The translations under genes and the position numbers were made by a program. Positions 2,014 through 60,944 of a DNA stretch of 64,000 nt are shown one piece after another. The stretch's first letter is position 1; each line of letters opens with the position of its first letter. Location: positions 62,001 through 126,000 of the IMG/VR virus record IMGVR_UViG_3300028676_000003, one strand, 5' to 3'. Below the pieces are notes generated by a model. The model saw only the letters and a list, made by a program, of their open reading frames with translations. It made no database searches and had not been told where the DNA came from.

Positions 2014-2034
2014 GATAACATTTATATATAAATA

Positions 2035-2065
2035 TTTGGATATATGAAATAAAGTCGTACCTTTG
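2035..2065 (+). promoter_or_regulatory. Bacteroidota-type sigma70 promoter
   Basis: TTTG-N19-TACCTTTG. Confidence 0.8.
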
Positions 2066-2081
2066 TATAAATTTAGAAGAA

Positions 2082-2402
2082 ATGAAAGGAATTGAAAATC
2101 ACATTCTAATGACTATTTGTGAGGAATCATTTGAGTTTTTTGGAACAACAAAGTTTACTACTTATACCAGCTTCTGCAATACCTTTAAGTATGCGATGAT
2201 TGAGGGTAACTTCAGCTTTCCACAAAAGCAGATGATGACTAGGGTCGGAAAGATGCTAAAGTTGGTTTACGCCTTGGATGATGATTCTATTGGTTTTTAT
2301 ATCAATACGTATTTCAGCTTAAGTCAAGACCAAATAATTCAATTTGAGAAGGTTGTGAGGACCATGAAGGTTGCTTATCCGATGAGTAGTATTAATAAAT
2401 AG
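2082..2402 (+). CDS. Hypothetical protein
   Basis: 106-aa ORF behind host-type promoter. Confidence 0.7.
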   Translation: MKGIENHILMTICEESFEFFGTTKFTTYTSFCNTFKYAMIEGNFSFPQKQMMTRVGKMLKLVYALDDDSIGFYINTYFSLSQDQIIQFEKVVRTMKVAYPMSSINK

Positions 2403-2643
2403 GAACTACTTGAATTTCTCCTTTAAAGTATTGTGATTTTTTATCTTCTAGGTATTCGGTTAGAATTCTTTTAAGATAAAAGGTTGGATATGTTGGGGAA
2501 AATATTGGACTAAGCCAAGCAATTCCTTTATCTATAGCATTGGCAGAACTTCTTTTGCCACCGCAAGCATATAGGTATATGATTTGGTGGTCATTTGGAA
2601 ATTGACGTTCGATATATTCACGTAGAAATTCTTCTTCAGACAT
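2392..2643 (-). CDS. Hypothetical protein
   Basis: 83-aa ORF convergent with the previous gene. Confidence 0.65.
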   Translation of the reverse strand: MSEEEFLREYIERQFPNDHQIIYLYACGGKRSSANAIDKGIAWLSPIFSPTYPTFYLKRILTEYLEDKKSQYFKGEIQVVPIY

Positions 2644-2704
2644 TGCTTTTTAGATTAAGTATATTATATTTATAATTATAACAAAAAAAATTAAAAATTA
2701 AAGA

Positions 2705-3031
2705 ATGGCATTAGAAATAAACGCAGAAAACTTTGACGAGTTGGTTATCAACTCAGACGTACCAGTATTGATGGACTTTTGGGCCCCTTGGTGCGGACCT
2801 TGCAGAATGCTTGGCCCTATTATTGATTCATTAAATGAAGAAAACAAAGATAAAAATATCAAGATTGTTAAGATTAACGTTGACGATAATCAAGAGATTG
2901 CTCTTAAATTTGGCGTTCGTGGTATTCCATTAACCCTAGCTATCAAAGATGGTAAGGAAGTGGAAGGTAGTCGAAACGCTGGTATTCAAGCTAAGGCTGA
3001 GTATCAAAAGCTTATTGATAGCTTATTGTAA
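2705..3031 (+). CDS. trxA: Thioredoxin
   Basis: DFWAPWCGPC active site, GVRGIP cis-Pro loop, 108 aa. Confidence 0.97.
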   Translation: MALEINAENFDELVINSDVPVLMDFWAPWCGPCRMLGPIIDSLNEENKDKNIKIVKINVDDNQEIALKFGVRGIPLTLAIKDGKEVEGSRNAGIQAKAEYQKLIDSLL

Positions 3032-3079: not shown

Positions 3080-3100
3080 GTTCTGTAGATATTTATTAGT

Positions 3101-3779: not shown

Positions 3780-3890
3780 TTGATTCTCAAGGGATTATCA
3801 AAGAGAGATAAAACATTAACAAAATAGTAAAGCTTAAGCGAGAGTCTGTAGATATTTATAGTTAAATAACACATACTTAAATGATACGCC

Positions 3891-4232
3891 ATGAATGCTA
3901 ATAAATTTTTATTGACAGCTAATCAAGGTAATAGAACTGCACTAGATAAAGCATATAATAATCATATGAATTCTGTCTTGAATTCTTTCGACGAAGAAGA
4001 AGAGAATAGATGGGAAACGTATAATTTAGTGATAAGCGAGCTTATGTCGCAAGGTAATAAGAATTATTTCAAAGAGGTTAAATATCGTTTAACTGACGGT
4101 GAAAATCCAAATGAAATTATTCTAGATATCATTGACAGAGCAAACGACGATGCAAGTAGTCTTGTATGGTTACTTAAACGTAGAATTGAGGAATATGTTG
4201 AGGATGATTATTTTAAAAGATTTTTGGTCTAA
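3891..4232 (+). CDS. Hypothetical protein, paralog of 3459..3779
   Basis: WETYNLVISEL ... YRLTDGENPNEI. Confidence 0.75.
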   Translation: MNANKFLLTANQGNRTALDKAYNNHMNSVLNSFDEEEENRWETYNLVISELMSQGNKNYFKEVKYRLTDGENPNEIILDIIDRANDDASSLVWLLKRRIEEYVEDDYFKRFLV

Positions 4233-6259: not shown

Positions 6260-6310
6260 AATTTTTCATTTTGGTCTAGCGTTTATATATTTATTATAAA
6301 CGTTAGTCCG

Positions 6311-6469
6311 ATGAAAAAATATGTCTTACAAGTTAGTGATGGAGAAGTAATTAACAGTGTTCTTACTTACTCTATAGAAGATGCGATAGAAATTTTCGCA
6401 ATCACAAAAAACCTCTCAATTGAACAATTACTAAAAATTTTTACAGTTGGTGAAGTATTATCTAAATAG
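6311..6469 (+). CDS. 52-aa hypothetical protein (absent from ORF track)
   Basis: MKKYVLQVSDGEVINSVLTYSIEDAIEIFAITKNLSIEQLLKIFTVGEVLSK; late motif 15 nt upstream. Confidence 0.6.
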   Translation: MKKYVLQVSDGEVINSVLTYSIEDAIEIFAITKNLSIEQLLKIFTVGEVLSK

Positions 6470-6495
6470 TTAATATTTATAGTTAAATATATATT

Positions 6496-7347
6496 ATGGC
6501 AGATAAAAAAATAAGTCAATTACCTCAAGGTGTAATTAACTCAAATAGCATATTTCCATTGCTAAGCAATGGTGTAACCTCACAAGTATCATATGATGAT
6601 ATGGCTACCGCATTCAGTAGTAGTGGTGGTAGTGGTTCTCAAGATTTTCAAGAAACACTTGAAAATGGATTCACAACAGATATTCCTTTTTATCATGAAA
6701 CATCAGATGGTATTACAGTTCAAAGTGGTATCATAGAACGTGATGGTGAAGCATTTCCTTTGAATGGTATTAACATGGATTATAGTAGTCAAGTAGCTGG
6801 AGCTTTTGTTAGAATAGGTTTCTCTACTGGTGAAGGACCAGTTATTGTTATCGAAACTAATTATATTGGTGGTGAAGAACTTGTTGATACAATTTCAACT
6901 AATTATTATTTACCTCATAGTCAAGATGGTGGGTCAAACCAAGTTATAACAGACAAGGATTTGTCTACAGGTAATTTTACTTCAGAAATTAGTTCACGTG
7001 CAACTGAAGTACCAAGTTCAGGTAATACATGGATTCAAGATTTTTATTGGACACGTGTTGGAAATACTGTTAGCTGTACTGCTGAGATTAGTGTTCAAAT
7101 TAACCAAGATGTTAGTAGCAATGGAACTTGGGTTGAATTTACTCTTCCTTTCCCTCAATCTAATTCTCAATCAAGGACCAATGTCGGAAACGGTGTACTA
7201 GCTGGTGGTGGTGTTAACGGTATTTATACCTCAGCATTTATCCAAATGGAAGATACAACACACGCTAAGGTTAGATTCTACGGAAAATCAGGCGATACTT
7301 CAAGTTCATATCAAGGTGAAATTCACTTTACATACTTAACAGAATAA
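6496..7347 (+). CDS. Fibre/appendage-like virion protein
   Basis: MADKKISQLP N-terminus shared with fibre 60962..63367; beta-rich C-terminal domain; late motif. Confidence 0.6.
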   Translation: MADKKISQLPQGVINSNSIFPLLSNGVTSQVSYDDMATAFSSSGGSGSQDFQETLENGFTTDIPFYHETSDGITVQSGIIERDGEAFPLNGINMDYSSQVAGAFVRIGFSTGEGPVIVIETNYIGGEELVDTISTNYYLPHSQDGGSNQVITDKDLSTGNFTSEISSRATEVPSSGNTWIQDFYWTRVGNTVSCTAEISVQINQDVSSNGTWVEFTLPFPQSNSQSRTNVGNGVLAGGGVNGIYTSAFIQMEDTTHAKVRFYGKSGDTSSSYQGEIHFTYLTE

Positions 7348-7822: not shown

Positions 7823-7900
7823 TTTTAAACAAAATTAATTTTTTTTGATTTTATAACATATTTATTATAGAAATAAGATTTTATTTAAAACTTAGAACAT

Positions 7901-8116
7901 ATGTCAGACAAAACAGTTACAAAAAAAACCGTAAAAATTAAAGAATCTCATTTAGTTGATTTAATCGACGATATCGTAAATGAAGCAGTTGCGGTTAAAA
8001 AACAGGAATGGATTAACGAACAAGCTAATCTTGAAGCTGGTAAAACAGCAATCTTAGAATCTAAGATGAAAGAATTAGAAGAAAAATTGAATAGACTTAC
8101 TGAAGGTAAGAAATAA
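7901..8116 (+). CDS. Small coiled-coil protein with VKIKESHL motif
   Basis: 71-aa ORF, late motif upstream, terminator downstream. Confidence 0.7.
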   Translation: MSDKTVTKKTVKIKESHLVDLIDDIVNEAVAVKKQEWINEQANLEAGKTAILESKMKELEEKLNRLTEGKK

Positions 8117-8175: not shown

Positions 8176-8227
8176 ATTTTTATACCTTTCCTATTTTACG
8201 AGATATTTATATCAAGACATACACATT

Positions 8228-9319
8228 ATGGAAAGAGTTATACAAAAACTAGAAAGAGCTACTATACCTCTTGTATCTAGTGTCATTAAAGACGAATTTA
8301 TCGCTGCAAGTGAAACTGCTTTTGACTGTGCTTTTAACGGTACATCAACATTTTATCCTTGGAAGATGCCCGATATACCTAAAGACTTCAAGTTAGGAAT
8401 TATCGTAGGTTCTTCAGGTTCGGGGAAATCTACACTTCTTAAAGAATTTGGTACAGAAGAAGTTCCTGTTTGGGAATCTGACAAATCAATCATATCACAT
8501 TTCGAAACACCAAACGATGGAATCAACAAGCTTATGGCCGTTGGACTGAATTCTATACCGTCTTGGTACAAGCCATATCACGTATTATCCAATGGTGAAA
8601 AATTTAGAGCTGATTTAGCACGCAAATTACGCACGAACTGTGTCATAGATGAGTATACTTCCGTTGTAGATAGAAACGTGGCTAAGGCGGCTTCTGTGAG
8701 CTTATCTAAGTATGTTCAAAGACATAAGTTAAGTGGAGTTGTTTTATCGACGTGTCATCATGACATTGTTGATTGGTTGGAACCTGATTGGGTTTTGAAT
8801 ACAGATACAGGTGAATTAATTCACGGTTTTTTTTTTAAAAGACCAAGCATCGATATTGAAGTATATCGCACAACAAATGAAAGTTGGCGAATGTTTAAAG
8901 ACCATCACTATTTAACTGGAAACCATAATTCAGCTTCAAGATGCTACTTGGCTGTTTGGAACGATACCGTTGTTGGATTTGCCAGCGTAATTACTATGCC
9001 TAGCGGAACCGTTAAGAATGCGTGGCGTGGACATAGGAGTGTTGTCTTGCCTGATTTTCAGGGAATGGGAATTGGTGTGAGATTTACTGAGGCTGTTGCT
9101 CAAATTCACTTGGATGAGGGACATAAGTTTTATTCTCGTACAGCTCACCCAAAGATGATAGAGTATAAGACTGCATCACCTTTGTGGAAACCGACTAGTA
9201 AAAATAAGAAGCTAAGAAAAGATGTTACCGATGATAATACCTTTAAGAATCACGTTTACGATAATAAACGTTTATGTGGTAGCTTTGAGTATATTGGTCC
9301 TAAACAAGACCAATCTTAA
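8228..9319 (+). CDS. ABC-type ATPase fused to GNAT acetyltransferase (COG2401-like)
   Basis: Walker A GSSGSGKST, LSNGE signature, Walker B VIDE; GNAT motif VLPDFQGMGIG. Confidence 0.9.
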   Translation: MERVIQKLERATIPLVSSVIKDEFIAASETAFDCAFNGTSTFYPWKMPDIPKDFKLGIIVGSSGSGKSTLLKEFGTEEVPVWESDKSIISHFETPNDGINKLMAVGLNSIPSWYKPYHVLSNGEKFRADLARKLRTNCVIDEYTSVVDRNVAKAASVSLSKYVQRHKLSGVVLSTCHHDIVDWLEPDWVLNTDTGELIHGFFFKRPSIDIEVYRTTNESWRMFKDHHYLTGNHNSASRCYLAVWNDTVVGFASVITMPSGTVKNAWRGHRSVVLPDFQGMGIGVRFTEAVAQIHLDEGHKFYSRTAHPKMIEYKTASPLWKPTSKNKKLRKDVTDDNTFKNHVYDNKRLCGSFEYIGPKQDQS

Positions 9320-9810: not shown

Positions 9811-10539
9811 TTATTGGTATAGTTGAGGGTTTAGTTTTCCATATTTTCTAATGATAACACCAGCAACTGCATTGGCTTCATTTTCAATTGGACTTCCGTC
9901 TTCTCCATCTTTTCCAGCGTTTAGTAGTCTTCCTTGAATATTTTGTTGATGGTGGACCAATTCGTGAGCTATTGAACGACATACATCGATAATTGCTCTG
10001 TCTTTAACATAAATCTTGATGAATCCATCTAAGTTATAGTAAGCAGTTGTTGTTAAGTCAGGCGTTCTCTCATAGGCCAATTCAACCTTGATATCATCAT
10101 TTATTCCAAGATGTGCCTTGGCAAAGTTTATAAAGTCTGCAACTTGTCTTACATCTCTTTCATCGTGTGTTAAAAGACCTTCTCTAAGAAGACTTTTAAT
10201 CATTGGTTTATTTTCATTCATCTTAGGGTATCTAATCATATCATCTTTGAATCCAAAGTGCTTATATTGTCCTTTATTGGCTTTAAAACCAAACTTTTTA
10301 TAGAATTGAACAAGTCTGTTCTTATTTCCACCGAAATCACTTGATGGAGTAAGAGCGATAATTTGTTTATTTTTATCTGCATAGTTTATCAGGTCGGTCA
10401 TAATCTTTGAACCAACACCACTATTTCTAACGTCTTTATTTAAAATAATTTTAGATAAGATAAGACTTGTTTTGTTTTCGTAGATATCTAAACCTTGTAG
10501 ATATTCACTATATTTGTTTCTTAAAATTTCTTGTATCAT
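9811..10539 (-). CDS. GNAT domain plus HEXXH (zincin-like) domain fusion
   Basis: VRNSGVGSKIM ... FYKKFGF (GNAT); IAHELVHHQQ ... ENEANA (metallopeptidase-like); linker MIKSLLREGLL. Confidence 0.75.
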   Translation of the reverse strand: MIQEILRNKYSEYLQGLDIYENKTSLILSKIILNKDVRNSGVGSKIMTDLINYADKNKQIIALTPSSDFGGNKNRLVQFYKKFGFKANKGQYKHFGFKDDMIRYPKMNENKPMIKSLLREGLLTHDERDVRQVADFINFAKAHLGINDDIKVELAYERTPDLTTTAYYNLDGFIKIYVKDRAIIDVCRSIAHELVHHQQNIQGRLLNAGKDGEDGSPIENEANAVAGVIIRKYGKLNPQLYQ

Positions 10540-10552
10540 ACTTTATAAATAT

Positions 10553-13446: not shown

Positions 13447-13887
13447 ATGTTACTAAAAAAAACAGAACAACAAGGAAAAATTAAAGCATTATATTTGTCA
13501 TCAAATATTTGTGCGTCAATCTATGACAAAGAGAATAAGGATTTAATCATCATTTACAAAAACGGTGGTCAATACAAATATCCAACTGTTAGTCTTACAG
13601 ATTACACAAGATTCGAAATGGCCGATAGTCAAGGAGCCGTATTCAACTCACACTTGAAAAAATATGCTCACTTGAAATTAGACAGAGTTGATACTGCTGA
13701 AATCATGAACGAGGTTAACGACCTTAAAGAAGCTGAAGATAAAAAGATGCTTGAGGATGCTACAATCCTTATGATTCACCAATTACAATCAGTTCTTACA
13801 ATGTATAATGTTAGTGGAGCTATTGACAGTGCTATCTTAGATAAAGCTGACAAATCTATTCAACACTACAAAGGTATAAAAAAATAA
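13447..13887 (+). CDS. KTSC-domain protein
   Basis: SSNI..SIYD....L.I.YKNGG.Y.Y..V ... SQGAVFN pattern. Confidence 0.8.
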   Translation: MLLKKTEQQGKIKALYLSSNICASIYDKENKDLIIIYKNGGQYKYPTVSLTDYTRFEMADSQGAVFNSHLKKYAHLKLDRVDTAEIMNEVNDLKEAEDKKMLEDATILMIHQLQSVLTMYNVSGAIDSAILDKADKSIQHYKGIKK

Positions 13888-15808: not shown

Positions 15809-15843
15809 GTTTTCTATAATATTTATAAATAAAGATAAAAATT

Positions 15844-16089
15844 ATGGCAAAAATTAATGATATTCACAGTATTATCGTATCTGCGGATGCTCCTATCTTC
15901 AGCGCACACACTTACACTGAGATACTTGGTGGAACAGCTGGGTGTTCGGTAACTCTTAACGGTACAGCCGTTGAAATTGCTCCTAGTTCAAGTATTAGTA
16001 TTTGGGTTAGAACAATTAGTGGTGGAGCGGGTTGTTACTTATTGGGTGACAATAGAGATGTAACTCAAGGAAGTCCAACAGTTGGATAA
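15844..16089 (+). CDS. Small late (probably structural) protein
   Basis: Late motif 16 nt upstream; beta-rich 81 aa. Confidence 0.6.
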   Translation: MAKINDIHSIIVSADAPIFSAHTYTEILGGTAGCSVTLNGTAVEIAPSSSISIWVRTISGGAGCYLLGDNRDVTQGSPTVG

Positions 16090-16147
16090 CAACTTTGGTT
16101 AAAACCTAGATATTTATATAACATAAAAGAAAACAAAAATATTTAAT

Positions 16148-16870
16148 ATGAAAAACAATAACATAAATGTAAACCCAATTGGTTTAAAAGGTTCTGAAGT
16201 TAACGCTCGTATGAAAGAGTTAATGGGAATTAGCACTATCAACGAAAACAAAACCAATTCTAAGGTTGAATTAACTAAGATTGGTCCTGATGGGAAGTCT
16301 TATGCTATCATAAGAGAAAACCATAAATACTTTATCAAAAGCAGTGAAAAAACCAAAGGTTTAATTGCTGAAGATTTTAGCTACATTGGTGGTTTAAAAA
16401 ACAAAACTTCTGAAGCTTACGATTCATATGCTAGTGCTATCAAACACTTGAACATCAACTTTAAATCACTTGCTGATGCACATGGTCAAGGTGGTGATAT
16501 CAACGTGTTCAAAAACGACAACTTGATTAATGAATCAGGTGTTGCTGGATTCTCTAATCATAGTGGTAACGGTTTCTCAGGTGCTGGTAACATGGAAGGT
16601 AACACTCCATTATACGAAGATACTGAAGAAGTAACTGAAGGTTATGATGACGAACCATACTACGACGATGTTAAAGGTAAAAAAAGCGACAGATGGGATT
16701 CTGATGATGCTGACGACAAAGAAAGCGATGATGCTGATGATATGTCAGAAGCTGAATTGGCTGTTGATGCTATCCTACAAGAAACTGAAGGTAAGAGATT
16801 ATCTATCCGTTTTGCTATGGAGAACATGGACGCTATCATTGAGTCTATCGACGTAAAAAAAAAAGACTAG
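16148..16870 (+). CDS. Putative prohead core protein, N-terminal part (ends at A10 run)
   Basis: Acidic, several INE/INES sites; ends GTA AAA AAA AAA GAC TAG. Confidence 0.75.
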   Translation: MKNNNINVNPIGLKGSEVNARMKELMGISTINENKTNSKVELTKIGPDGKSYAIIRENHKYFIKSSEKTKGLIAEDFSYIGGLKNKTSEAYDSYASAIKHLNINFKSLADAHGQGGDINVFKNDNLINESGVAGFSNHSGNGFSGAGNMEGNTPLYEDTEEVTEGYDDEPYYDDVKGKKSDRWDSDDADDKESDDADDMSEAELAVDAILQETEGKRLSIRFAMENMDAIIESIDVKKKD

Positions 16871-17715
16871 TTAAAGAAGAAAAATATACATTAAAGGTTG
16901 CGAGCCCTGCGCCAGCACCTGTTCCACAACCCCAAGAACCAGCACCTACTGCTGGTTTTGGTGCTTCTGAAAACCCTGAACCAACTGATAAACCATTCAA
17001 CGATGAACCGTTTGATGCTGGTGTTGAGGCCGATGAAGAAACAGACCCAAAAAGATACATTGAACAATTAACTGGAAAGCTTGGACAATCACTTAGACAA
17101 TATACGTCTAGTATTGGTCGTCCTGATTTCGACCTTGAAAAGTTCGCAATAAATTCATTATTGTCAGCTACTCATACCGCTGAAATGGATGAAAAAGATA
17201 GAGAAGATATAATAACTAAAGTTAACACAGCTGGTAACAATGATGACGATTCAGAGAATTCTGATTTTGATAGTACTGACCGTACTCCCGATAATAACGA
17301 TGGTAGTAACGATGGGGGTAATGATGAGTTTGGCGGTGATGCTGAATTTGGGAATGATAACGATGAAGAAGACTTGGAAGAAGTCCAAATATACGAAAAC
17401 GAAAGTCTTTTTCTTGAAGAGCCAGTGAGATGTAATATGTTTCAGCATGGGTCGAATGATATTTTAGATGAAACTCTTAATGAGGGCTTGATTAATCAAA
17501 AAAAAAGTAGTATCTTTGAAAAAAGATATTTAAAGTCTAAATTACAAGAAAGTTTTAATCAAGAAGAAGAAATGAAGAACAACGAAGAACCATTAACTGC
17601 ACCTGCGCCTGTCGTTAAACCTGACGTAAAGCCTGACGTGGCACCAAGTAGAAGAAATAAACCCTTCTTACCGATGCCTGAAGTGCAACCAGACCCTAAA
17701 GCTAAGAATGAGTAA
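16864..17715 (+). CDS. Minus-1-frame continuation of 16148..16870 (Pro/acidic putative core protein)
   Basis: Frame open 16843-17715; first ATG only at 17185; 16864-17160 encodes protein-like RLVKEEKYTLKV ... DPKRYIEQLTGKLGQSLRQY. Confidence 0.7.
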   Translation, partial: RLVKEEKYTLKVASPAPAPVPQPQEPAPTAGFGASENPEPTDKPFNDEPFDAGVEADEETDPKRYIEQLTGKLGQSLRQYTSSIGRPDFDLEKFAINSLLSATHTAEMDEKDREDIITKVNTAGNNDDDSENSDFDSTDRTPDNNDGSNDGGNDEFGGDAEFGNDNDEEDLEEVQIYENESLFLEEPVRCNMFQHGSNDILDETLNEGLINQKKSSIFEKRYLKSKLQESFNQEEEMKNNEEPLTAPAPVVKPDVKPDVAPSRRNKPFLPMPEVQPDPKAKNE

Positions 17716-20507: not shown

Positions 20508-20563
20508 ATTACCCATAAATTAGGAGTAATCTTGTAACCCTTAATTTTTAGGCATTTGCGACA

Positions 20564-20571
20564 TATTTATA
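20564..20571 (+). promoter_or_regulatory. Putative late promoter (terL)
   Basis: TATTTATA 20 nt before ATG. Confidence 0.65.
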
Positions 20572-20591
20572 AGAAACTAAAACTTATAATT

Positions 20592-22361
20592 ATGTTAACA
20601 ACAAATGAAATATTTAAGGAATATTCTAAGTGTTTGATGAATCCAGCATACGCTATTGAAACGTATTTGGAAACATTCGATAAAACACAAGAAGGTTTTG
20701 TGCCGTTTAAACTATTTCCAAGACAGCATGAAATTATCAAAGCATACGATAAACACAGATTTAATATTGTAACAAAACCAAGACAAGCTGGTGTATCAAC
20801 AACTACTGCCGCTTATATGTCTATCAAGGTTGGTTGGGCTGACCCTGAGAACCCTGAGAGTATTCTTATTATTGCCAATAAACAAGAACTTGCATTTGAG
20901 TTCTTAGGAAAGATTAAAGATTTCTTAAGACAACTTCCAAGATGGGTTTGGGGTGAAGAATACTATGGAACACCACAAAAAGAAGGTAAATCTATTTTTA
21001 ATACAGATTCAAAAAAAGAAATCAAATTACCAAATGGAAGCCGTGTTAAAGCCGTTGCGACATCTAAGGATGCCCTTCGTGGATTTACACCAACTTATCT
21101 TGTAATGGATGAGGCCGCTTATATTGATAATGGAGCTGAGGTGTTTGGTGCCGCTCTTACATCGTTAGGTACTGGGGGTAGAGCTACCCTTATTTCTACA
21201 CCTAATGGTATGGATGCTTTATACTACAAAACATATGACCAAGCTATCAATAAAAGAAATAACTTTAATGTTATTGAAATGAAATGGTACGAAGACTTAC
21301 GTTATAATAAAGACTTACGTTGGATTAGAGGTGATGAAGAAGAAGAAGAACCTGATAAGTTATCATTCGCAACATATGAACAAAGAATCAAGGACGGTTG
21401 GAAACCAACATCTTCTTGGTATGAGGAAATGTGTCTTGGTATGAACAACGATGAAAAAATGATTGCTCAAGAGCTTGATGTATCATTCATTGGTTCAGGG
21501 GGTAATATCATCAACGAGAAATATATAGAATATCAAGAAAAAAATAATGTTCAAAAACCAATGTTATATTTTGGGCCTGAACAAGAAACTTGGGTTTGGG
21601 CTGAACCTAAAGAAGGACACCAATACATTATGGGTGTCGATGTAGCTAGAGGTGATGGTGCCGATGCTTCAACTATTGTTATTATTGATTTTACAACAAT
21701 GGAACAAGTTATGGAATACCAAGCTAAGATTCAACCCGATTTGCTTGCACACGTTGTGTTTGAATGGGGTAATCGTTATAAAGCTTATACTGTCGTAGAT
21801 ATTACTGGTGGTATGGGTGTTTCTACAGTACTTAAGCTTCTTGAATTAAACTACAAACACTTACACTACGATACTACTGTTGGGAAGATTCTTTCACCTA
21901 AACAAAGAAATATGCAAATTATGAATAATTCTGAAAAAATCCCAGGTTTCCAAGCCAATGGTGTACGTACATCTATGGTTGCAAATCTAGAATACAGAAT
22001 TAGAGAAAACCACGTAAAGATTCGTTCATCAAGAATGATTTCTGAAATGAAAACATTTATCTATGATAAGAATGGTCGTCCTGACCACATGGCTGGATAT
22101 CATGATGATTTACTTATGTCACTAGGTATGGCTTTATGGGTATTGGATAATTCATTCAAAAATTTAGAAAGACTTGAAGCTCAAACTAAAGCTATTCTTA
22201 ATTCTTGGATGAGTACTGGAACTCAACACACTTTGAATAGTGTTGATGCTAGTGGTAAAGAGGTAAGAAAACCAGTTCATGCGAAGCCATTTGTGAACCC
22301 ACGTGACCCAAAAGGTGAACATATGTGGTTATTTGCTGGTATGGCTGGTAATAAAAGGTAA
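20592..22361 (+). CDS. terL: Terminase large subunit (T4 gp17-like)
   Basis: KPRQAGVST Walker A, LVMDEAA Walker B, ISTPNG motif III, GVDVARG and HDDLLM nuclease motifs; start set at ATG 20592. Confidence 0.96.
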   Translation: MLTTNEIFKEYSKCLMNPAYAIETYLETFDKTQEGFVPFKLFPRQHEIIKAYDKHRFNIVTKPRQAGVSTTTAAYMSIKVGWADPENPESILIIANKQELAFEFLGKIKDFLRQLPRWVWGEEYYGTPQKEGKSIFNTDSKKEIKLPNGSRVKAVATSKDALRGFTPTYLVMDEAAYIDNGAEVFGAALTSLGTGGRATLISTPNGMDALYYKTYDQAINKRNNFNVIEMKWYEDLRYNKDLRWIRGDEEEEEPDKLSFATYEQRIKDGWKPTSSWYEEMCLGMNNDEKMIAQELDVSFIGSGGNIINEKYIEYQEKNNVQKPMLYFGPEQETWVWAEPKEGHQYIMGVDVARGDGADASTIVIIDFTTMEQVMEYQAKIQPDLLAHVVFEWGNRYKAYTVVDITGGMGVSTVLKLLELNYKHLHYDTTVGKILSPKQRNMQIMNNSEKIPGFQANGVRTSMVANLEYRIRENHVKIRSSRMISEMKTFIYDKNGRPDHMAGYHDDLLMSLGMALWVLDNSFKNLERLEAQTKAILNSWMSTGTQHTLNSVDASGKEVRKPVHAKPFVNPRDPKGEHMWLFAGMAGNKR

Positions 22362-24476: not shown

Positions 24477-24520
24477 GTTTTTTGTCTAAAATTATAATAT
24501 TTATTAATAAATTAAAACAC

Positions 24521-39272: not shown

Positions 39273-39280
39273 TATAAATA
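39273..39280 (-). promoter_or_regulatory. Putative late promoter (spike operon)
   Basis: TATTTATA on minus strand, 29 nt before ATG. Confidence 0.65.
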
Positions 39281-39307
39281 TCTGTAAATCTGTTTTAAAA
39301 CCAATTT

Positions 39308-55454: not shown

Positions 55455-55898
55455 TTATAAAATTTGTTTATTGTTATTGTTATTCATGTATTCTATTAAA
55501 TATCTGATATCAGAAATTTCTTTGTTTAATCCTTCACTTAATGCTTGGTTGTTACTAAGAATTTTGTGTTTTTCTCCACCTGAGTGGTCAGCTTTTCTAC
55601 TAACACTAGCTGGCCCTGCTACCTTTGTCGGGTCATGTTGTTGATACATTCCATTTGGGTTTGTATCTTTCTGAACCTTTCTTCTTAATTCATCAGCTTT
55701 CTTAGGTACTTCAACAACTGGTTCGATTTCCCTCATTCTAGTGTCGCCACCCAATGAATTATATTCTGAGCAATTCTTGGTATCAACACAAGTCTTCTGA
55801 GCTGATTTAAGTCTTGATAACTCCATAGCATAAGCTTGGTGTTTCTTACCATCTTCATTCCCAGTCGTTAAATGTCTGTCTTTGATATTTGAATTCAT
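55455..55898 (-). CDS. Hypothetical protein
   Basis: 147-aa ORF; ALSEG site near C-terminus. Confidence 0.65.
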   Translation of the reverse strand: MNSNIKDRHLTTGNEDGKKHQAYAMELSRLKSAQKTCVDTKNCSEYNSLGGDTRMREIEPVVEVPKKADELRRKVQKDTNPNGMYQQHDPTKVAGPASVSRKADHSGGEKHKILSNNQALSEGLNKEISDIRYLIEYMNNNNNKQIL

Positions 55899-56371
55899 TA
55901 TAGTTTTTTTGGTTTATTCACATCAGCTTTTTTAGCTTCTATGGTTTTACATAATTCTTCGATTTGTTCTTCCGATAAATCTGTATCTTTTATATTGTCA
56001 ATTATCTTGGCAAGCTTGGGGTTATAATTTTTATCAGTAAGGTCTGAAGATTTACTTTTTTTAACCAAGTCTTCAATTTTTTCTTCGACATTTTTCTTTT
56101 TAATAATTGTTGATTTATTTTCTGCAATTGGATTACCTCTATTAGCTCCCCATGCATATACTGCAAACCAAGGAATATCTTGACGATAACGACTTGTCAC
56201 CTTATCAGTTGTAGGCGGCATTCCTTTCTCATAGTCAGAATCATCATTAAATGGTTTTTGAATCGGCCCAGTTTCAATTTCACTATTGCTGGTAACGTTT
56301 CTGTCACCACCGCTAGAAAAAGGGTCACCACCAACTAATTCATCTAACTGTTTCTTTATATTTGTATTCAT
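55898..56371 (-). CDS. Hypothetical protein
   Basis: First gene after late motif 56386-56393. Confidence 0.7.
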   Translation of the reverse strand: MNTNIKKQLDELVGGDPFSSGGDRNVTSNSEIETGPIQKPFNDDSDYEKGMPPTTDKVTSRYRQDIPWFAVYAWGANRGNPIAENKSTIIKKKNVEEKIEDLVKKSKSSDLTDKNYNPKLAKIIDNIKDTDLSEEQIEELCKTIEAKKADVNKPKKL

Positions 56372-56385: not shown

Positions 56386-56417
56386 TATAAATATATTCAA
56401 AACGTAGAATATTTATA
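56386..56417. promoter_or_regulatory. Divergent pair of putative late promoters
   Basis: TATTTATA on minus (56386-93, 14 nt before ATG) and on plus (56410-17, 15 nt before ATG). Confidence 0.7.
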
Positions 56418-56432: not shown

Positions 56433-59066
56433 ATGGCATTTACAACAAAATTAGACTATTCTAATAATAGACAAATCAAACAACATATAGAAACCTTCAC
56501 ACTTTTATCAGGTGGGACTGTATTTGGTGTGACTTTCAACGATTTACCAACTGGACCAAATGAATCAACAAGTGCGATTACTGAAACACATACGCTAGTA
56601 GCAAGTACGTTCTCAGGAAACAACACAACAACGAATTTCAATTGGTATCATCCTCTTATGGAATTGGGTCACCCTCAACTTTCAGCTATAACTCCATCAA
56701 ACTCAGGGGAAACACAAACCGCTTTACCTGCTTATTCTGCAACTGCATTCACAACCATTGATGGTAACGTTGCGGCTACTGAATATACAGGTTCAACATT
56801 TGATATTACTGTTATTACAATGACAGATTTAGGTGGTGGTAATTATACTGGAACACTACAAACAGATGAACTTCTTATACTTTCAGCTCAAACAGCTGAT
56901 TTTACTGGTAGAACAATATGGAATGATGTTCAAGGAATTTCTAGAACTGAAAGACTTATAGTGACAAATAACCCACAAGTTGGTTATGTATTAACTTGTG
57001 CTGATACTGAAGGTATGGCCGAATGGTCTCCATCATCAGGTGGTTCGGGTGGAACTGGTGATACATACGTAACAGGTGGTACATATAATGGTGGAACAGC
57101 AATTTTTACAAATAATACAGGTGGAACATTTAGTGTTACAGGTTGGAAATTATCAGGTGGAACTGGCCTAAATAGTCAAGCAACCGTTAATGGTAATAAT
57201 CAAGCATTAGGTGATTATTCATTAGCTGTTGGTTCAGGTTCAACAGCTTTAGGTTATGCATCGTTTGCAAGTGGTAGAAACACAATTGCTGGTAGTTTTG
57301 CTCATGCAGAAGGGATTAATACTCAAGCCAATGGCCCTGAATCTCACGCTGAGGGTGCATTTAGTATAGCTGGTGGTGCGGCATCTCATGCTGAAGGTCA
57401 AGATACTCAAGCTATTGCAAATAGGTCACACGCTGAGGGAAGCGGGACAACAGCAAATGGTGATTCAAGTCATGCTGAAGGTTCAGGAAGTATTGCAAGT
57501 GGTATAGCGTCACATGCTGAAGGTCTTCAATCACAAGCATTAGGTGTTGCTAGTCATGCTCAAGGTAATACAACAATAGCTTCAGGTCACTCATCTTTTG
57601 CTAGTGGAACATTAACAAATGCTAATGGTGCTGGTAGTTTCGTTCATGGAACTGGAAGTACCGTTAACGGTAACTATTCAATCGTATTAGGTAGAAATAT
57701 TACTGGAAATACAGCCGATACAACATATGTCGATTTTTTAAATATTAAAAATATACCAGCGGGTACACCAATAAATAATTTAGGTTATGATGCAACAGGA
57801 CGTGTAGTTATTGGTACTACTGGTGGTGGTGGAACCAATTATTGGTCTGCATCAACTGGAACAAACGCAATCGGAGTAATAAACTTTGGTGGAACAGCTT
57901 CAGGTGACTATGGTATTACAATGGGTTGGCAAACAACAGCTTCAGGGGTAATGTCTTTGGCTCAGAACTCAGGGACGACAGCTTCAGGTACTGCTTCATA
58001 TGCTGAGGGTTCATTTACAATTGCTGGTGGTGATGGAGCACATGCTGAAGGTGGTTATACTAACGCTTCAGGTTTCTTCTCTCATGCACAAGGATATGGT
58101 TGTGTTGCTAGTAATGAATTTTGTCATGCTGAAGGTTCGGGAAGTATTGCAAGTGGTCATACATCTCACGCTGAAGGTACGTTTTGTATCGCTGGTGGTT
58201 CAGATGCACATGCTCAAGGATTTAGAACACAAGCATATGGGAATGGTGCTCACTCAGGTGGACTAGAAACACAAGCAAATGGTATTGCTAGTTTTGTTCA
58301 TGGTTCAGGAAGTACAGCAAATGGAAATTACTCAATTGTATTGGGTAGATTTATCACAGGAAATACAGCTGACACAACATATGTTGATAATTTGAATATT
58401 AAGACTGTTGGAACTGGTCCTGGGACTATTGATTTAGGTGTTAATGCTTCAGGTGTTGTAGTTAATCAAGCTTCTGATGCTAGACTTAAAGAAAATGTAA
58501 ACACAATTGATAATGCTTTGGGTATCGTTATGAATCTTAGAGGTGTTAGTTATAATTGGATAGATAGAGTTAATGGTGGTAATGATTTAAGACTTGGGTT
58601 TATCGCTCAAGAAGTTCAAGAGGTTGTACCTGAATTGGTAACACAAAATGGTGAATACTTAGGTGTTCAATATAAAGATGTACCTGCGTTGCTTGTTGAA
58701 GCTATCAAGGAATTGGTTAATGGTAAAACTTTGTATACCAACACACAGATTGAAACACAAACAATTCTTGCTGAGGATAATAATATCGAACTTAATGTAA
58801 ATGGTACTACTGAAACTAGTATAGGTGGTGGTATTAAGGTATTAAACACAAAAAATGAAGAAGGATTTTCTGACTTAACTCTTAACGAAAACGGTGATTG
58901 GATAACAAATACAGGTTTTGAACCAAAAGCTATTAGTATTCCTTTCTATACTCCAACATCTTCAAATGATGAAATCGGTAGTATTGGAAACGTAACGAGA
59001 AATGATGATTATTTATACATAAAAACAACCAATGGTTGGAAACGTAGCAGTTTAGAAAGCTTTTAA
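56433..59066 (+). CDS. Tail fibre with two YadA-head-like repeat modules and an S74 intramolecular chaperone
   Basis: 14-aa SHAEG repeats; QASDARLKENV ... LRGVSYNW ... GFIAQEV ... LLVEAIKEL. Confidence 0.88.
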   Translation: MAFTTKLDYSNNRQIKQHIETFTLLSGGTVFGVTFNDLPTGPNESTSAITETHTLVASTFSGNNTTTNFNWYHPLMELGHPQLSAITPSNSGETQTALPAYSATAFTTIDGNVAATEYTGSTFDITVITMTDLGGGNYTGTLQTDELLILSAQTADFTGRTIWNDVQGISRTERLIVTNNPQVGYVLTCADTEGMAEWSPSSGGSGGTGDTYVTGGTYNGGTAIFTNNTGGTFSVTGWKLSGGTGLNSQATVNGNNQALGDYSLAVGSGSTALGYASFASGRNTIAGSFAHAEGINTQANGPESHAEGAFSIAGGAASHAEGQDTQAIANRSHAEGSGTTANGDSSHAEGSGSIASGIASHAEGLQSQALGVASHAQGNTTIASGHSSFASGTLTNANGAGSFVHGTGSTVNGNYSIVLGRNITGNTADTTYVDFLNIKNIPAGTPINNLGYDATGRVVIGTTGGGGTNYWSASTGTNAIGVINFGGTASGDYGITMGWQTTASGVMSLAQNSGTTASGTASYAEGSFTIAGGDGAHAEGGYTNASGFFSHAQGYGCVASNEFCHAEGSGSIASGHTSHAEGTFCIAGGSDAHAQGFRTQAYGNGAHSGGLETQANGIASFVHGSGSTANGNYSIVLGRFITGNTADTTYVDNLNIKTVGTGPGTIDLGVNASGVVVNQASDARLKENVNTIDNALGIVMNLRGVSYNWIDRVNGGNDLRLGFIAQEVQEVVPELVTQNGEYLGVQYKDVPALLVEAIKELVNGKTLYTNTQIETQTILAEDNNIELNVNGTTETSIGGGIKVLNTKNEEGFSDLTLNENGDWITNTGFEPKAISIPFYTPTSSNDEIGSIGNVTRNDDYLYIKTTNGWKRSSLESF

Positions 59067-59068
59067 TA

Positions 59069-60913
59069 ATGGGAAACATAAGAAATTATAATTTTAGTCT
59101 ACAAGACCTTAAATTAACGGATGCTGGGTTTTGGGATTTTTATTTAACAAATGATGCTGGTGGTGATGGTGCTTACAATTATTGTGAGCCACTTCTAACT
59201 GGAAGTTGTTCAGTTGTTTGGTATGATTTTAATAACCTAAGTATCTACACGAATTCAGCTATAACATCAAATGATATTTACAGCTTGTATACTTGGACTG
59301 GTGCAACCAATTCAGGTTATACCTTTAATACTATTGGTCTAACTGGAATTGACAATGGTTTTATTCTTTTTGATAAGTTGAGTGGTGATACTTCTAATGA
59401 AGCATTATTATCTGCCTTGACTGGAAGCACTCTTGTAATTCCTTCAGGTGATACGAGACTTCATATGAATAGAGTTAGCGGTACTACAGGTTTATATACC
59501 TATGGTGGTGATGTGATGCTTGAACCAACAAACCCTGATGTAGGTTATTTCTTTAATTTATATGGTGGATTTTATCAAGGATTCTATAAAATTGATGGTT
59601 CAACCTACGAAGTTTTGCCAGTTAGAGTAAATTACTCATGGGCCGCTGAATTTTGGTTAACAACAACACAATTCTCAGCTTCAACTGGAACTACACTAAA
59701 TGATTTTTACCCTGAAAATTCAGGATTCTTCTTTTATATTGGAACTCGTGCTGAGAATAAATTTTGGAATAAATGGGAAGGTGCAGATACTGGTTGTACT
59801 TCAGGTTGTACAGCTGATTCAGGATGTACAGATACAGTTAGTGAATGGTGTACAGTACCAAAAGAAAGTGAAATCACTCTTATTGGTGATTATGGAATTG
59901 GTATTCCGCTTGACCCACCTAGAGTTGATATTGACCTTGTTACAAACGGGTTTCTTATCTATGGTAGAGCTTGCGATTGTAGACCTGAAGAATTAACTGG
60001 TGATACTGGAAGTATCATTTACGAACCACCAATGATACTAACTGGTGACACACAACAACCTTGTAATGTTTGTCGTAAGTGTGGTGGGTGTAGTCCAACT
60101 GGTTTAGGAACTCAAACCGCTTGTTCATATGATGGTAAGGGTATTGCTGTTGCAAGTACTAGAGAGGTTCTAACAAATACTCAAAACCCATTCTTGGTTT
60201 ACGGTAGAGCAAGCAAAAATAAAGGTTGTTCATGTTGTTCAGGGCCTGAAGATGGTTTAGGTAATGAAACAGTTTGTTCATTTAGTGGGTTTACTTCAGA
60301 AGAAGTTAGTATAGATTATAACCTAGATATCATTGATAATGCTTTAGGTTTTAGAATTACACCTGAAGGTGCTATTGGATATCGTCTGCTTACCTCGACT
60401 GGAACTTGTGTTACAGAAAGTGGTGAGACTAAATATATTAGCGGTACAACGATTGAGGAAAAATATTCTGAAGATGGATTAATAAAAGATGGTTTTTGGT
60501 ATTATGTTGTTATTAAGTTTGTAACAAATTACTTAGATGATTGTGACTTAGAAACAGCGAAGCCAAGGAAAGGAAAATTAATGTTTTATATAAATGGTTT
60601 TTTAAAATTTGTCGTAGATGATTTCGATGAATTTGTAGCTAGAAGACTAGATGAATACAAAGATAAACAAGTAGGAGTACCATTCAACTTTAGCATAGGT
60701 GGTGGTTCTCAAGGACTTATTGATTCACAGACATTTGACGGGCTTGACCCTAATGATAGAGGACTACCAATTGAAACACATTTTGGTGGTACATTTATCG
60801 GTGGAATATCGCAATTCAAGTTTGATATTTGTGATTTGAGCCTTTGTAATATAAGGGAAAATTACGCTAGTCAATCTATTAGGTATGGTGTACAAGATTT
60901 ATTTACACTTTAA
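59069..60913 (+). CDS. Cys-rich virion protein with probable C-terminal LamG/ConA-like domain
   Basis: WYYVVI ... LMFYING ... FSIGG ... FIGGISQF; about 20 Cys. Confidence 0.6.
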   Translation: MGNIRNYNFSLQDLKLTDAGFWDFYLTNDAGGDGAYNYCEPLLTGSCSVVWYDFNNLSIYTNSAITSNDIYSLYTWTGATNSGYTFNTIGLTGIDNGFILFDKLSGDTSNEALLSALTGSTLVIPSGDTRLHMNRVSGTTGLYTYGGDVMLEPTNPDVGYFFNLYGGFYQGFYKIDGSTYEVLPVRVNYSWAAEFWLTTTQFSASTGTTLNDFYPENSGFFFYIGTRAENKFWNKWEGADTGCTSGCTADSGCTDTVSEWCTVPKESEITLIGDYGIGIPLDPPRVDIDLVTNGFLIYGRACDCRPEELTGDTGSIIYEPPMILTGDTQQPCNVCRKCGGCSPTGLGTQTACSYDGKGIAVASTREVLTNTQNPFLVYGRASKNKGCSCCSGPEDGLGNETVCSFSGFTSEEVSIDYNLDIIDNALGFRITPEGAIGYRLLTSTGTCVTESGETKYISGTTIEEKYSEDGLIKDGFWYYVVIKFVTNYLDDCDLETAKPRKGKLMFYINGFLKFVVDDFDEFVARRLDEYKDKQVGVPFNFSIGGGSQGLIDSQTFDGLDPNDRGLPIETHFGGTFIGGISQFKFDICDLSLCNIRENYASQSIRYGVQDLFTL

Positions 60914-60936
60914 TCAAATAAATACATAAAATAATA

Positions 60937-60944
60937 TATTTATA
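60937..60944 (+). promoter_or_regulatory. Putative late promoter (fibre)
   Basis: TATTTATA 17 nt before ATG. Confidence 0.6.

What the first reader, a model, noticed from the sequence alone, without database searches (positions are those of the whole stretch)
2027..60944. Putative late promoter TATTTAT(A/T): the reverse complement of the T4 late promoter, with its own gp55-like sigma
Seen: TATTTATW on the coding strand 3-35 nt before about 20 unit-leading genes: 2027(-), 2667, 3090, 3853, 6288, 6474, 7859, 8204, 10544(-), 15820, 16111, 20564, 24498, 26428, 30527, 35813(-), 39273(-), 56386(-), 56410, 60937, plus 27235 at 61 nt. These include terL, protease, scaffold/MCP, spike and fibre operons, and are almost mutually exclusive with the host-type promoters. 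Established: T4 gp55 reads TATAAATA. Inference: 39308..40036 is a gp55-like sigma with shifted specificity. Caveat: the 8-mer is common in AT-rich DNA and a few reverse copies occur (e.g. 15824, 56426), so position and orientation are the evidence.
Basis: partly seen in the sequence, partly recalled or inferred. Interest (0 to 1): 0.62.

Follow-up and report, generated by a model that had tools for sequence, protein, structure and literature searches.

The report
Phage late promoter and its sigma
A 368-kb phage of Bacteroidota carries a nearly invariant 8-base signal (ATATTTAT) just upstream of its particle-building genes; it is most likely a late promoter read by a phage-made sigma factor related to T4 gp55, and the same motif and sigma occur together in a large group of mostly uncultured phages.

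Summary
All 21 listed sites exist, each reads A+TATTTAT+W, and each lies 3-34 nt (61 nt for one) before the first ATG of a long ORF.

**Motif.** In the whole 368,549-bp phage genome, ATATTTAT is the top oriented upstream 8-mer. It is 47 sense versus 6 antisense in co-directional spacers. It is absent from the first 60 kb, which holds host-type promoters only, and concentrated at 60-240 kb. It precedes terL, the head protease, the unit that ends in the major capsid gene, the tail sheath and fibre-like genes. No -35-like box is conserved, and 12 of 47 sites directly follow terminators.

**Sigma.** The 39308..40036 product is a sigma-70-family protein. Its N-terminal domain superposes on T4 gp55 (Z 10.9). 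An extra ~100-aa C-terminal domain resembles sigma region 4 only weakly.

**Link.** Flavobacterium phage immuto (34% identical homologue) and three 14-21-kb metagenomic contigs with homologues (31-36% identity) carry TATTTAT in the same places. A Flavobacterium phage without the homologue does not. This supports the sigma-motif link, which remains an inference.

**Caveats.**
- Two RpoD-like sigma genes lie outside the window.
- No gp33, gp45 or DnaN-type clamp was found.
- DNA polymerase and helicase genes also carry the motif.
- No RNA data could be obtained.

The parts
39308..40036 (-). Gene for a 242-aa divergent sigma factor: a gp55-like region-2 domain (about residues 13-137) plus a folded C-terminal domain (about residues 143-242)
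   Evidence: Pfam Sigma70_r2 23.6 bits, 25.6 bits in six-frame search. AF2 model pLDDT 92.7. T4 gp55 chain 7d7c_F Z 10.9, and all other top hits are sigma factors. PHROG 234 hit in 19 of 78 family members.
39274..39281 (-). ATATTTAT core in the spacer just after the sigma gene, 30 nt before gene 39243..38866
   Evidence: The same placement after the sigma gene is seen in immuto and in L013, L014 and L017.
2028..2035 (-). ATATTTAT core before gene 2013..1759
2666..2673 (+). ATATTTAT core before gene 2705..3031
3089..3096 (+). ATATTTAT core 4 nt before ATG 3101 (possible leaderless mRNA), directly after a terminator at 3052-3077
3852..3859 (+). ATATTTAT core before gene 3891..4232
6287..6294 (+). 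ATATTTAT core before gene 6311..6469
6473..6480 (+). ATATTTAT core before gene 6496..7347
7858..7865 (+). ATATTTAT core before gene 7901..8116
8203..8210 (+). ATATTTAT core before gene 8228..9319 (PHROG 11143, function unknown)
10545..10552 (-). ATATTTAT core 5 nt before ATG of gene 10539..9811, abutting a terminator at 10557-10582
15819..15826 (+). ATATTTAT core before gene 15844..16089, after a terminator at 15784-15804
16110..16117 (+). ATATTTAT core before gene 16148..16870 (acidic protein; an A10 run joins it to frame 16843..17715)
20563..20570 (+). ATATTTAT core before the large terminase gene (likely start ATG 20592), heading the terL-portal unit
24497..24504 (+). ATATTTAT core before an ORF starting at ATG 24521 (253 aa), just after the portal gene
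26427..26434 (+). ATATTTAT core before the head maturation protease gene 26456..27181, after a terminator
27234..27241 (+). ATATTTAT core 62 nt before gene 27304..28590, which is followed by the major capsid gene 28626..30452
30526..30533 (+). ATATTTAT core 4 nt before ATG 30538 (possible leaderless mRNA), after a terminator
35814..35821 (-). ATATTTAT core before gene 35798..34392
56387..56394 (-). ATATTTAT core before gene 56371..55898; one arm of a divergent pair
56409..56416 (+). ATATTTAT core before tail-fibre-like gene 56433..59066
60936..60943 (+). ATATTTAT core before gene 60962..63367 (shares PHROG 25468 repeats with the fibre-like gene)
68..75 (+).

Best explanation
ATATTTAT (extended form ATATTTAT-W-A-n-W-AAA) is the single-element promoter of the phage's second temporal class, which covers the late genes and perhaps some middle genes.

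Proposed mechanism:
- The phage has no detectable RNA polymerase of its own. Host core RNA polymerase would therefore be re-programmed by the phage-encoded 242-aa sigma from 39308..40036.
- The gp55-like region-2 domain of that sigma would dock on the beta-prime clamp helices and read the A/T-only element as a -10-type box.
- No -35-type box is needed. The C-terminal domain probably takes the place of sigma region 4, or of T4 gp33, on the beta flap.
- Transcription would start 4-7 nt downstream of the last T, in the conserved A-run. This gives very short leaders, with the ATG most often 12-17 nt after the motif, and a few leaderless mRNAs.
- The sigma gene has no such motif upstream and ends an earlier unit. 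The gene immediately after it is motif-led, so the switch is feed-forward, not self-activating.

Shown: motif statistics, placement and conservation; the sigma fold. Inferred: that the motif is a promoter, its timing, the start sites, and which sigma reads it.
For: **Motif**
- Top oriented upstream 8-mer genome-wide.
- 47 sense, 6 antisense and 0 in convergent spacers; 16-fold denser in spacers than in genes.
- Almost no tolerance to single substitutions.
- Spacing to the ATG peaks at 12-17 nt, with a second group at 30-35 nt. No conserved upstream box apart from a weak T-tract at -17 to -14.
- 12 of 47 sites directly follow a hairpin plus T-run terminator. A start signal is needed there, and this is the only conserved element.
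- 0 sites among 179 genes in the first 60 kb, which has 31 host-type boxes; 45 of 51 sites lie at 60-240 kb.
- Motif-led genes include terL, the head protease, the unit ending in the major capsid gene, fibre-like genes and the tail sheath.

**No phage polymerase:** PF00940, PF00562 and PF00623 found nothing.

**Sigma**
-.
- A large family, conserved over its full length: 1232 representatives at 50% identity with E <= 0.001.

**Link between sigma and motif**
- Flavobacterium phage immuto has a 34%-identical homologue and no RpoD-like sigma.
- In immuto, TATTTATA is again the top upstream 8-mer, 23 forward and 7 reverse with 1.0 expected.
- It sits before terL, portal, sheath, tube, tape measure and the gene after the sigma homologue, with 44 plus-strand against 7 minus-strand sites.
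- Contigs encoding homologues of 31-36% identity carry TATTTAT after the sigma gene and before sheath, holin and terL.
- Control phage 11b, with no homologue hit, has 0 sense TATTTAT in spacers against 15 host-type boxes.
Against:
- Two other phage sigma genes exist, RpoD/RpoS-like, at G000 204,519-205,346 and 357,729-358,640. No separate third motif was found for them.
- The window protein itself misses PHROG 234 at E <= 0.001. It reaches only E 0.01 in a genome-scale search, and Pfam r2 is 0.4 bits under the cut-off.
- The motif also precedes DNA polymerase (together with a host-type box) and a DnaB-like helicase, so it is not purely 'late'.
- The motif differs from the host -7 box mainly by G to A, so a modified host sigma-A could in principle read it.
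- Co-occurrence rests on one complete isolate genome, five metagenomic contigs with homologues (three of 14-21 kb, two of about 1.2-1.5 kb) and one negative control.
Confidence: 0.6

Rival explanations
1. ATATTTAT is a promoter, but it is read by one of the two RpoD/RpoS-like phage sigma factors encoded elsewhere in the genome. The 242-aa protein would have another role.
For: Both genes have strong region-2 and region-4 matches. No separate motif class was found for them. Each is followed by an ATATTTAT site (G000 205383 and 359012).
Against: Phage immuto keeps the TATTTAT class before its structural genes yet has no Pfam Sigma70_r2 match anywhere in its 160 kb. It does have a homologue of the 242-aa protein. 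Full-length RpoD-like sigmas normally use a bipartite -35/-10 promoter, and no upstream box is conserved here. They are better candidates for the strongly bipartite TTTGGTAG-N16-TAYCTTTG class.
Confidence: 0.15
2. The motif is read by host sigma-A, redirected by a phage co-factor (sigma appropriation, as at T4 middle promoters) or simply as a weak -7 box variant. The phage sigma-like protein would not be the specificity factor.
For: Aligned on the TTT, nATATTTAT resembles the Bacteroidota -7 box TAnnTTTG plus TA. The weak T-tract 14-17 nt upstream of the motif falls roughly where the -33 TTTG would be.
Against: The G of TAnnTTTG is replaced by an invariant A, and the two 'n' positions become an invariant TA. 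No TTTG -33 box is present. The class is wholly absent from the early 60 kb, where sigma-A-type promoters abound. The class co-occurs with the sigma family and is absent from control phage 11b, which uses TAnnTTTG.
Confidence: 0.12
3. The motif is not a promoter. It would be a post-transcriptional signal in the mRNA leader (a processing site or translation enhancer), or a composition artefact of AT-rich spacers.
For: It lies very close to start codons (12-17 nt) in an organism group without Shine-Dalgarno use. The downstream leader is A-rich.
Against: Twelve sites sit immediately after strong terminators, where transcription must restart. Some sites are only 4-5 nt from the ATG, too close for a leader element. 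There is a strong excess over shuffles. The motif is absent from the early region, whose spacers are equally AT-rich, and absent in sense orientation from phage 11b spacers.
Confidence: 0.05

Closest known systems
T4 late transcription: gp55 sigma reading the 8-bp late promoter TATAAATA (Geiduschek & Kassavetis 2010, PMC2988020)
   Same: A phage-encoded, highly diverged region-2 sigma on host core polymerase. A single A/T-only 8-bp element near -10 with no -35 box. The element lies before head, tail and packaging genes. The fold of residues 13-137 superposes on gp55 (Z 10.9). T4-like head genes in the same genome.
   Different: The element is ATATTTAT(W): the central AA of TATAAATA becomes TT, and an extra 5' A is required. 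The protein is 242 aa, not 185, and has a folded ~100-aa C-terminal domain. No gp33, gp45-type or DnaN-type clamp was detected. The host is Bacteroidota.
Bacteroidota sigma-A promoters (-33 TTTG, -7 TAnnTTTG; own knowledge, seen here as TTTGGTAG-N16-TAYCTTTG)
   Same: The same TTT core flanked by TA. The late motif can be written nA-TA-TTT-A-TA against TA-nn-TTT-G-TA. This parallels the way T4's late box is an extended version of the E. coli -10 box.
   Different: No -33 box. An invariant A replaces the G. The 'nn' positions are fixed as TA. The distribution over the genome is different and non-overlapping.
Two sigma types of 'group 2' jumbo phages: a minimal sigma and an RpoD-like sigma, with no phage RNA polymerase (Iyer et al. 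2021, PMC7824862)
   Same: This genome has gp23-type head genes, no detectable RNA polymerase, one divergent sigma and two RpoD-like sigmas.
   Different: That survey reports gp33 orthologues in group 2; none was found here. No promoter motif for Bacteroidota members turned up in the literature searches.
ECF (group 4) sigma factors
   Same: Two helical domains and a similar size. The full-length model aligns over 156-158 residues with sigma-E and AlgU. The C-terminal domain's best matches include many region-4 domains.
   Different: ECF sigmas read bipartite -35/-10 promoters. No Sigma70_r4 HMM match in any of 78 family members. TIGR02937 scores only 15 bits.
Other phage sigma cascades (SPO1 gp28 and gp33/34; phiEco32 gp36)
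   Same: Temporal switching by replacing the host sigma on host core polymerase.
   Different: No sequence relationship was detected. Those sigmas read bipartite promoters (own knowledge).

Membership tests
T4 gp55 late sigma family (PHROG 234) | Region-2-type helical fold superposable on gp55 | tested here: met
   7d7c_F Z 10.9, rmsd 4.9 A, 118 of 137 residues, rank 2 of 487 chains. The Z values of other sigma region-2 domains are within about 1-2 units, so this shows a sigma region-2 fold, not gp55 specifically.
T4 gp55 late sigma family (PHROG 234) | Significant match to the family profile | tested here: inconclusive
   The window protein has no PHROG hit at E <= 0.001. E 0.01 in the genome-scale search, where it is the only hit. 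19 of 78 family members hit PHROG 234, best E 7.5e-6. hhalign of the family against T4 gp55: E 1.4e-4, probability 53%, 114 collinear columns. T4 gp55 itself hits PHROG 234 at 2.9e-69.
T4 gp55 late sigma family (PHROG 234) | Region 2 only (~185 aa), with no region-4-like domain and a short clamp-binding C-terminal tail | tested here: not met
   242 aa, with a folded C-terminal domain at residues ~143-242 (pLDDT 83 when modelled alone). The C-terminal ends are not conserved across homologues.
T4 gp55 late sigma family (PHROG 234) | Works with co-activator gp33 and sliding clamp gp45 | tested here: not met
   No match in the genome to T4 gp33, PF09116 or PF02916, or DnaN TIGR00663. Very divergent versions could be missed.
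T4 gp55 late sigma family (PHROG 234) | Cognate promoter is a single ~8-bp A/T element without a -35 box, upstream of late genes | tested here: met
   (in silico only).
T4-type late promoter | Consensus TATAAATA on the non-template strand | tested here: not met
   The sense-strand consensus is ATATTTAT(W). Its complement orientation is depleted, 6 against 47.
Sigma-70 family (Pfam Sigma70_r2 / r4) | Region 2 HMM match | tested here: met
   23.6 bits against a cut-off of 24 for the protein. 25.6 bits, over the cut-off, in the six-frame search. 46 of 78 family members match, best 5e-7. The profile hits SigA region 2 in the PDB at E 0.0035.
Sigma-70 family (Pfam Sigma70_r2 / r4) | Region 4 helix-turn-helix domain | tested here: inconclusive
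   No r4 HMM match in any member. Foldseek found nothing for the domain alone. The VIA wide search put about 14 region-4 domains among the top 50 of 48,161 chains, but at Z of only 4.4-6.3.
Bacteroidota sigma-A promoter | -33 TTTG plus -7 TAnnTTTG | tested here: not met
   No conserved upstream box. G replaced by an invariant A.
Functional promoter (any class) | Primary transcript 5' ends a few nt downstream; dependence on the sigma | not testable with these tools

The most novel reading that the evidence does not exclude
The 242-aa family could be a natural 'fused' late sigma. It would combine a gp55-type region-2 domain with a region-4/gp33-equivalent flap-binding domain in one chain, driving late transcription from ATATTTAT without a sliding clamp. 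Geiduschek and Kassavetis (PMC2988020) asked why no such fused late-transcription sigma exists in nature. If this reading is right, a very abundant clade of Bacteroidota phages (1232 clusters at 50% identity, contigs up to about 360 kb) uses one. Late transcription in these T4-like-headed phages would then be uncoupled from replication.
Probability: 0.3. Interest if true: 0.7.

Novelty: new variant of a known kind. Interest (0 to 1): 0.55.

Why it matters
Phage-encoded sigma switching is textbook, but almost nothing is known about transcription programmes in phages of Bacteroidota, whose hosts have unusual promoters and no Shine-Dalgarno use. This finding offers four things.

- **An annotation tool.** A sharply defined, easily searchable signal marks late transcription units in a large and environmentally abundant clade of jumbo and T4-like-headed phages.
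- **A cognate pair to test.** An isolated phage-host system is available (immuto on Flavobacterium sp. LMO8).
- **A possible natural fused late sigma.** This would be the gp55-plus-region-4 fusion whose absence in nature was noted in the T4 literature, and the T4 sliding clamp was not found.
- **A parallel with T4.** Like T4's late box relative to the E. coli -10 box, this late box reads as a -35-less derivative of the host's own -7 box. That suggests a general route by which phage late promoters evolve.

Tried and rejected

- Megablast of 5 kb of the window against phage records: no match.
No result.
- The search for related loci with the family alignment (no conserved stretch) and with P0194 (no confirmed relative). 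Replaced by the look-up of encoding contigs.

**Searches that found nothing in the genome**
- E. coli-type -35/-10 scan: 85 found against 84.8 expected, so uninformative for this host type.
- Phage RNA polymerase: none.
- gp33, gp45 and DnaN: none.
- A third promoter class among 76 spacers lacking both motifs: only A-rich leader words. Many of these 'spacers' are tRNA genes or unannotated ORFs.

**Comparisons that gave no support**
- TTTGGTAG looked at first like a third motif, but it is the -33 half of the host-type promoter.
- The small genes downstream of the sigma gene in the window and in immuto are not similar, so there is no conserved gp33-like neighbour (no PHROG hits).
- C-terminal domain against T4 gp33 by hhalign: no similarity. 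Its profile against PDB sequences: nothing. Foldseek: nothing.
- Microcystis phage Mel-JY01 (25%-identical homologue): 40 kb was too little for a strand test, with TATTTAT 28 against 31.

**Literature:** the words TATTTATA, ATATTTAT and TATTTAT appear in no phage paper in the library. Papers mentioning immuto do not treat promoters.
Full report
**Setting.** The window is bases 62,001-126,000 of a single 368,549-bp virus record (33.6% G+C, CheckV 100%). Genes were called mechanically as the longest non-overlapping ORFs. The genome has T4-type head and packaging genes:
- large terminase 20556..22361, portal 22410..24476, head protease 26456..27181 and major capsid protein 28626..30452;
- a tail sheath at G000 144,678-147,512.

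Its ordinary promoters are of the Bacteroidota kind. The strongly conserved bipartite form is TTTGGTAG, 16 nt, TAYCTTTG. E. coli-type -35/-10 pairs are at chance level, 85 against 84.8.

**Check of the observation.**
- All 21 listed sites are present.
- Every one is preceded by A, and every one lies 3-34 nt (61 nt for 27235) upstream of the first ATG opening a long ORF.
- The three sites that seem to lie inside ORFs (20564, 24498, 30527) do so only because the mechanical ORF starts at an upstream TTG or ATG.
- In the window, TATTTATW occurs 42 times against 23.0 +/- 4.4 in shuffles. ATATTTAT occurs 30 times against 11.6 +/- 3.5.

The whole genome gives the decisive test:
- Among 316 oriented upstream regions, ATATTTAT is the commonest 8-mer: 50 regions forward, 15 reverse, 3.3 expected. 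It ranks ahead of the host-type TACCTTTG.
- In spacers between co-directional genes it is 47 sense and 6 antisense (p 6e-9). It occurs 0 times in 2,966 bp of convergent spacers. It is 16 times denser in spacers than in genes. Mononucleotide shuffles of the spacers give 19 +/- 4.6 against 64 observed.
- Single-base variants of ATATTTAT are not sense-enriched. The one exception is ATATTTGT, which belongs to the host -7 box TAtaTTTG.

The element is therefore real, oriented and unusually sharp.

**Anatomy.** An alignment of 47 spacer sites shows:
- the invariant 8-mer;
- W and A at the next two positions, and a conserved AAA 4-6 nt after the last T;
- no -35-like box, only a T-rich tract 14-17 nt upstream. 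About 60% T remains there when sites behind terminators are removed.

The distance to the ATG clusters at 12-17 nt (22 sites) and at 30-35 nt (11 sites). Four sites are 4-8 nt from the ATG. In the three at 4-5 nt, the A of the ATG falls on the conserved A-run, as expected for leaderless mRNAs.

Twelve of the 47 sites directly follow a hairpin plus T-run terminator. Examples are 3052-3077 then 3089, and 10582-10557 then 10552. Transcription must restart in these short gaps, and ATATTTAT is the only conserved element in them.

**Distribution and gene content.**
- None of the 179 genes in the first 60 kb has the motif, whereas 31 have host-type boxes.
- 45 of the 51 motif-led genes lie between 60 and 240 kb.
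- Only 7 genes have both signals in their upstream region (odds ratio 0.35, p 0.011), mostly in divergent spacers.
- Motif-led units include terL (with portal downstream), the protease, the unit ending in the major capsid gene, two fibre-like genes and the tail sheath.
- The motif also precedes the DNA polymerase gene (which has a host-type box too) and a DnaB-like helicase gene. 'Late' may therefore mean 'middle and late'.
- No third motif class was found.

**The sigma gene.**
- *Sequence matches.* The 39308..40036 product (242 aa) scores 23.6 bits on Pfam Sigma70_r2 against a cut-off of 24. It scores 25.6 bits in the six-frame search. It has no NCBIfam, PHROG or PDB-sequence match of note.
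- *Family size.* It belongs to a very large family conserved over its full length. There were 7,796 hits among the 8,000 candidates scored, on contigs up to 362 kb. There are 1,232 representatives at 50% identity.
- *Family profile.* A 78-member alignment (A1) hits SigA region 2 (E 0.0035) and T4 gp55 (E 0.077) in the PDB.
- *Member-by-member scans.* 46 of the 78 members hit Sigma70_r2 and none hits region 4. 19 of 78 hit PHROG 234 'late sigma transcription factor', the family that T4 gp55 matches at 2.9e-69.
- *Direct comparison.* hhalign of A1 against T4 gp55 gives E 1.4e-4 over 114 collinear columns.
- *Structure.* The AlphaFold model is confident (pLDDT 92.7). Every meaningful structural match is a sigma factor. 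gp55 from the T4 late open complex ranks second (Z 10.9, rmsd 4.9 A, 118 residues).

**The C-terminal domain.**
- Residues ~143-242 form a second helical domain.
- Modelled alone (pLDDT 83), it finds nothing by Foldseek.
- In an exhaustive structural search, about 14 of the 50 best chains are sigma region-4 domains, but at Z of only 4.4-6.3.
- It shows no similarity to gp33.

The protein is thus a sigma-70-family member with a gp55-like region 2 and a possibly region-4-like C-terminal domain. It is not a plain gp55.

**Which sigma reads the motif?** The genome has two more sigma genes outside the window, both RpoD/RpoS-like with regions 2-4. It has no recognisable RNA polymerase.

Comparison with other phages favours the 242-aa protein.

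*Flavobacterium phage immuto* (160 kb, T4-like head genes) has a homologue 34% identical over the N-terminal half, gp118, and no Sigma70_r2 match at all.
- Its top oriented upstream 8-mer is TATTTATA: 23 forward, 7 reverse, 1.0 expected.
- The motif sits before terL, portal, sheath, tube, hub, tape measure, spike genes and the gene right after gp118.
- Sites of the form [AC]TATTTAT[AT] are 44 on the coding strand against 7 on the other. A separate early class, GTTG-N17-TAtaTTTAGG, is confined to 60-78 kb.

*Metagenomic contigs* encoding homologues of 31-36% identity show the same pattern:
- TATTTAT lies in the spacer after the sigma gene (L013, L014, L017).
- It also lies before a sheath gene (L013), a holin gene (L015) and terL (L016).
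- The glycosyltransferase gene upstream of the sigma gene is conserved (L013 and L015).

*Negative control.* Flavobacterium phage 11b (30.6% G+C, not among the tblastn hits) has 0 sense TATTTAT in its spacers, 7 antisense, and 15 sense host-type boxes.

**Mechanism proposed.** Host core polymerase plus the 242-aa sigma recognises ATATTTAT as a -10-type element. No -35 box is needed.

The motif can be aligned with the host -7 box as nA-TA-TTT-A-TA against TA-nn-TTT-G-TA. This is the same relation that T4's TATAAATA has to the E. coli TATAAT. That reading is more informative than 'reverse complement of the T4 box', which is literally true but mechanistically empty.

The sigma gene is the last gene of a unit without the motif, and the next gene is motif-led, here and in relatives. 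This points to a feed-forward switch.

No gp33, no T4-type clamp and no DnaN was found. Clamp-coupled activation as in T4 (PMC2988020) is therefore not supported here, and the C-terminal domain may stand in for gp33 or region 4 on the beta flap.

**Comparison with the literature.**
- Iyer et al. 2021 (PMC7824862) describe 'group 2' jumbo phages, including Bacteroidota phages. These lack an RNA polymerase and carry a minimal sigma, an RpoD-like sigma and gp33. The gene content here fits except for gp33.
- Geiduschek and Kassavetis note that a fused gp55-gp33 late sigma had not been found in nature. The present family is a candidate.
- No paper in the searchable library reports this motif for phages.

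**Limits.**
- Everything about function is inferred from sequence.
- Gene starts are mechanical.
- Co-occurrence rests on one complete isolate genome, five metagenomic contigs with homologues (three of 14-21 kb, two of about 1.2-1.5 kb) and one negative control.

**Verdict.** This is a new variant of a known kind: a phage late sigma with a single-element late promoter. It has a new consensus and a new sigma architecture, in a large, little-studied phage clade.

Noticed in passing
G000 204,519-205,346 (L002:1354-2181) and 357,729-358,640 (L001:1342-2253), outside the window: Two further phage sigma genes (275 and 303 aa), RpoD/RpoS-like with regions 2-4. Each is followed by a terminator and an ATATTTAT site. 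No distinct promoter class could be assigned to them.
   Followed up: partly
window 16843-17715, A-run at about 16856-16865: A run of ten A just before the stop of ORF 16148..16870 overlaps the start of an open frame (16843..17715) that has no start codon before 17161. A -1 shift in the A-run would fuse them into one acidic protein of about 520 aa. This is either programmed slippage or a homopolymer sequencing error. The gene is motif-led (16110).
   Followed up: partly
whole genome, densest at G000 0-60 kb; window examples 31671(-), 32597(-), 33703(-), 2058(+): Very strong early-type promoter consensus TTTGGTAG-N16-TAYCTTTG(TA), the Bacteroidota -33/-7 type, in front of many small genes. 31 of the 179 genes in the first 60 kb have the -7 box.
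   Followed up: partly
window 3089/3101, 10545/10539, 30526/30538; G000 273774: Motif only 4-5 nt from the ATG, which falls on the conserved A-run. These are candidates for leaderless mRNAs.
   Followed up: no
window 56387(-)/56409(+); G000 133508/133512 and 140705/140709: Divergent gene pairs share back-to-back or palindromic copies (TATAAATATTTATA) that give an ATATTTAT in both directions. These are possible bidirectional late promoters.
   Followed up: no
window 13869(-), inside ORF 13447..13887(+): A complete host-type promoter (TTTG plus TACCTTTG) on the strand opposite the called ORF. It points to either an antisense transcript or a wrong gene call there.
   Followed up: no
L029 (Microcystis phage Mel-JY01, PP395634.1 138797-179258): This phage, deposited as a Microcystis phage (32% G+C in this stretch), has a distant homologue of the sigma. 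Its spacers carry Bacteroidota-type promoters (TTG, about 18 nt, TAnnTTTG followed by TA). This raises doubt about the recorded host.
   Followed up: no
window 40037-40834(-); L013:9237-9995; L015:9270-9995: A family-2 glycosyltransferase gene immediately upstream of the sigma gene is conserved in distant relatives.
   Followed up: no
G000 about 234-303 kb: Many spacers without either promoter motif look like tRNA genes by eye, which suggests a large phage tRNA set. No tRNA scan was run.
   Followed up: no
L007 (immuto 60-78 kb): The early promoters of immuto read GTTG-N17-TAtaTTTAGGTAT, a -7 box ending in A-G-G rather than G. They are followed by a conserved leader, TCAATAATTAAAAC.
   Followed up: partly
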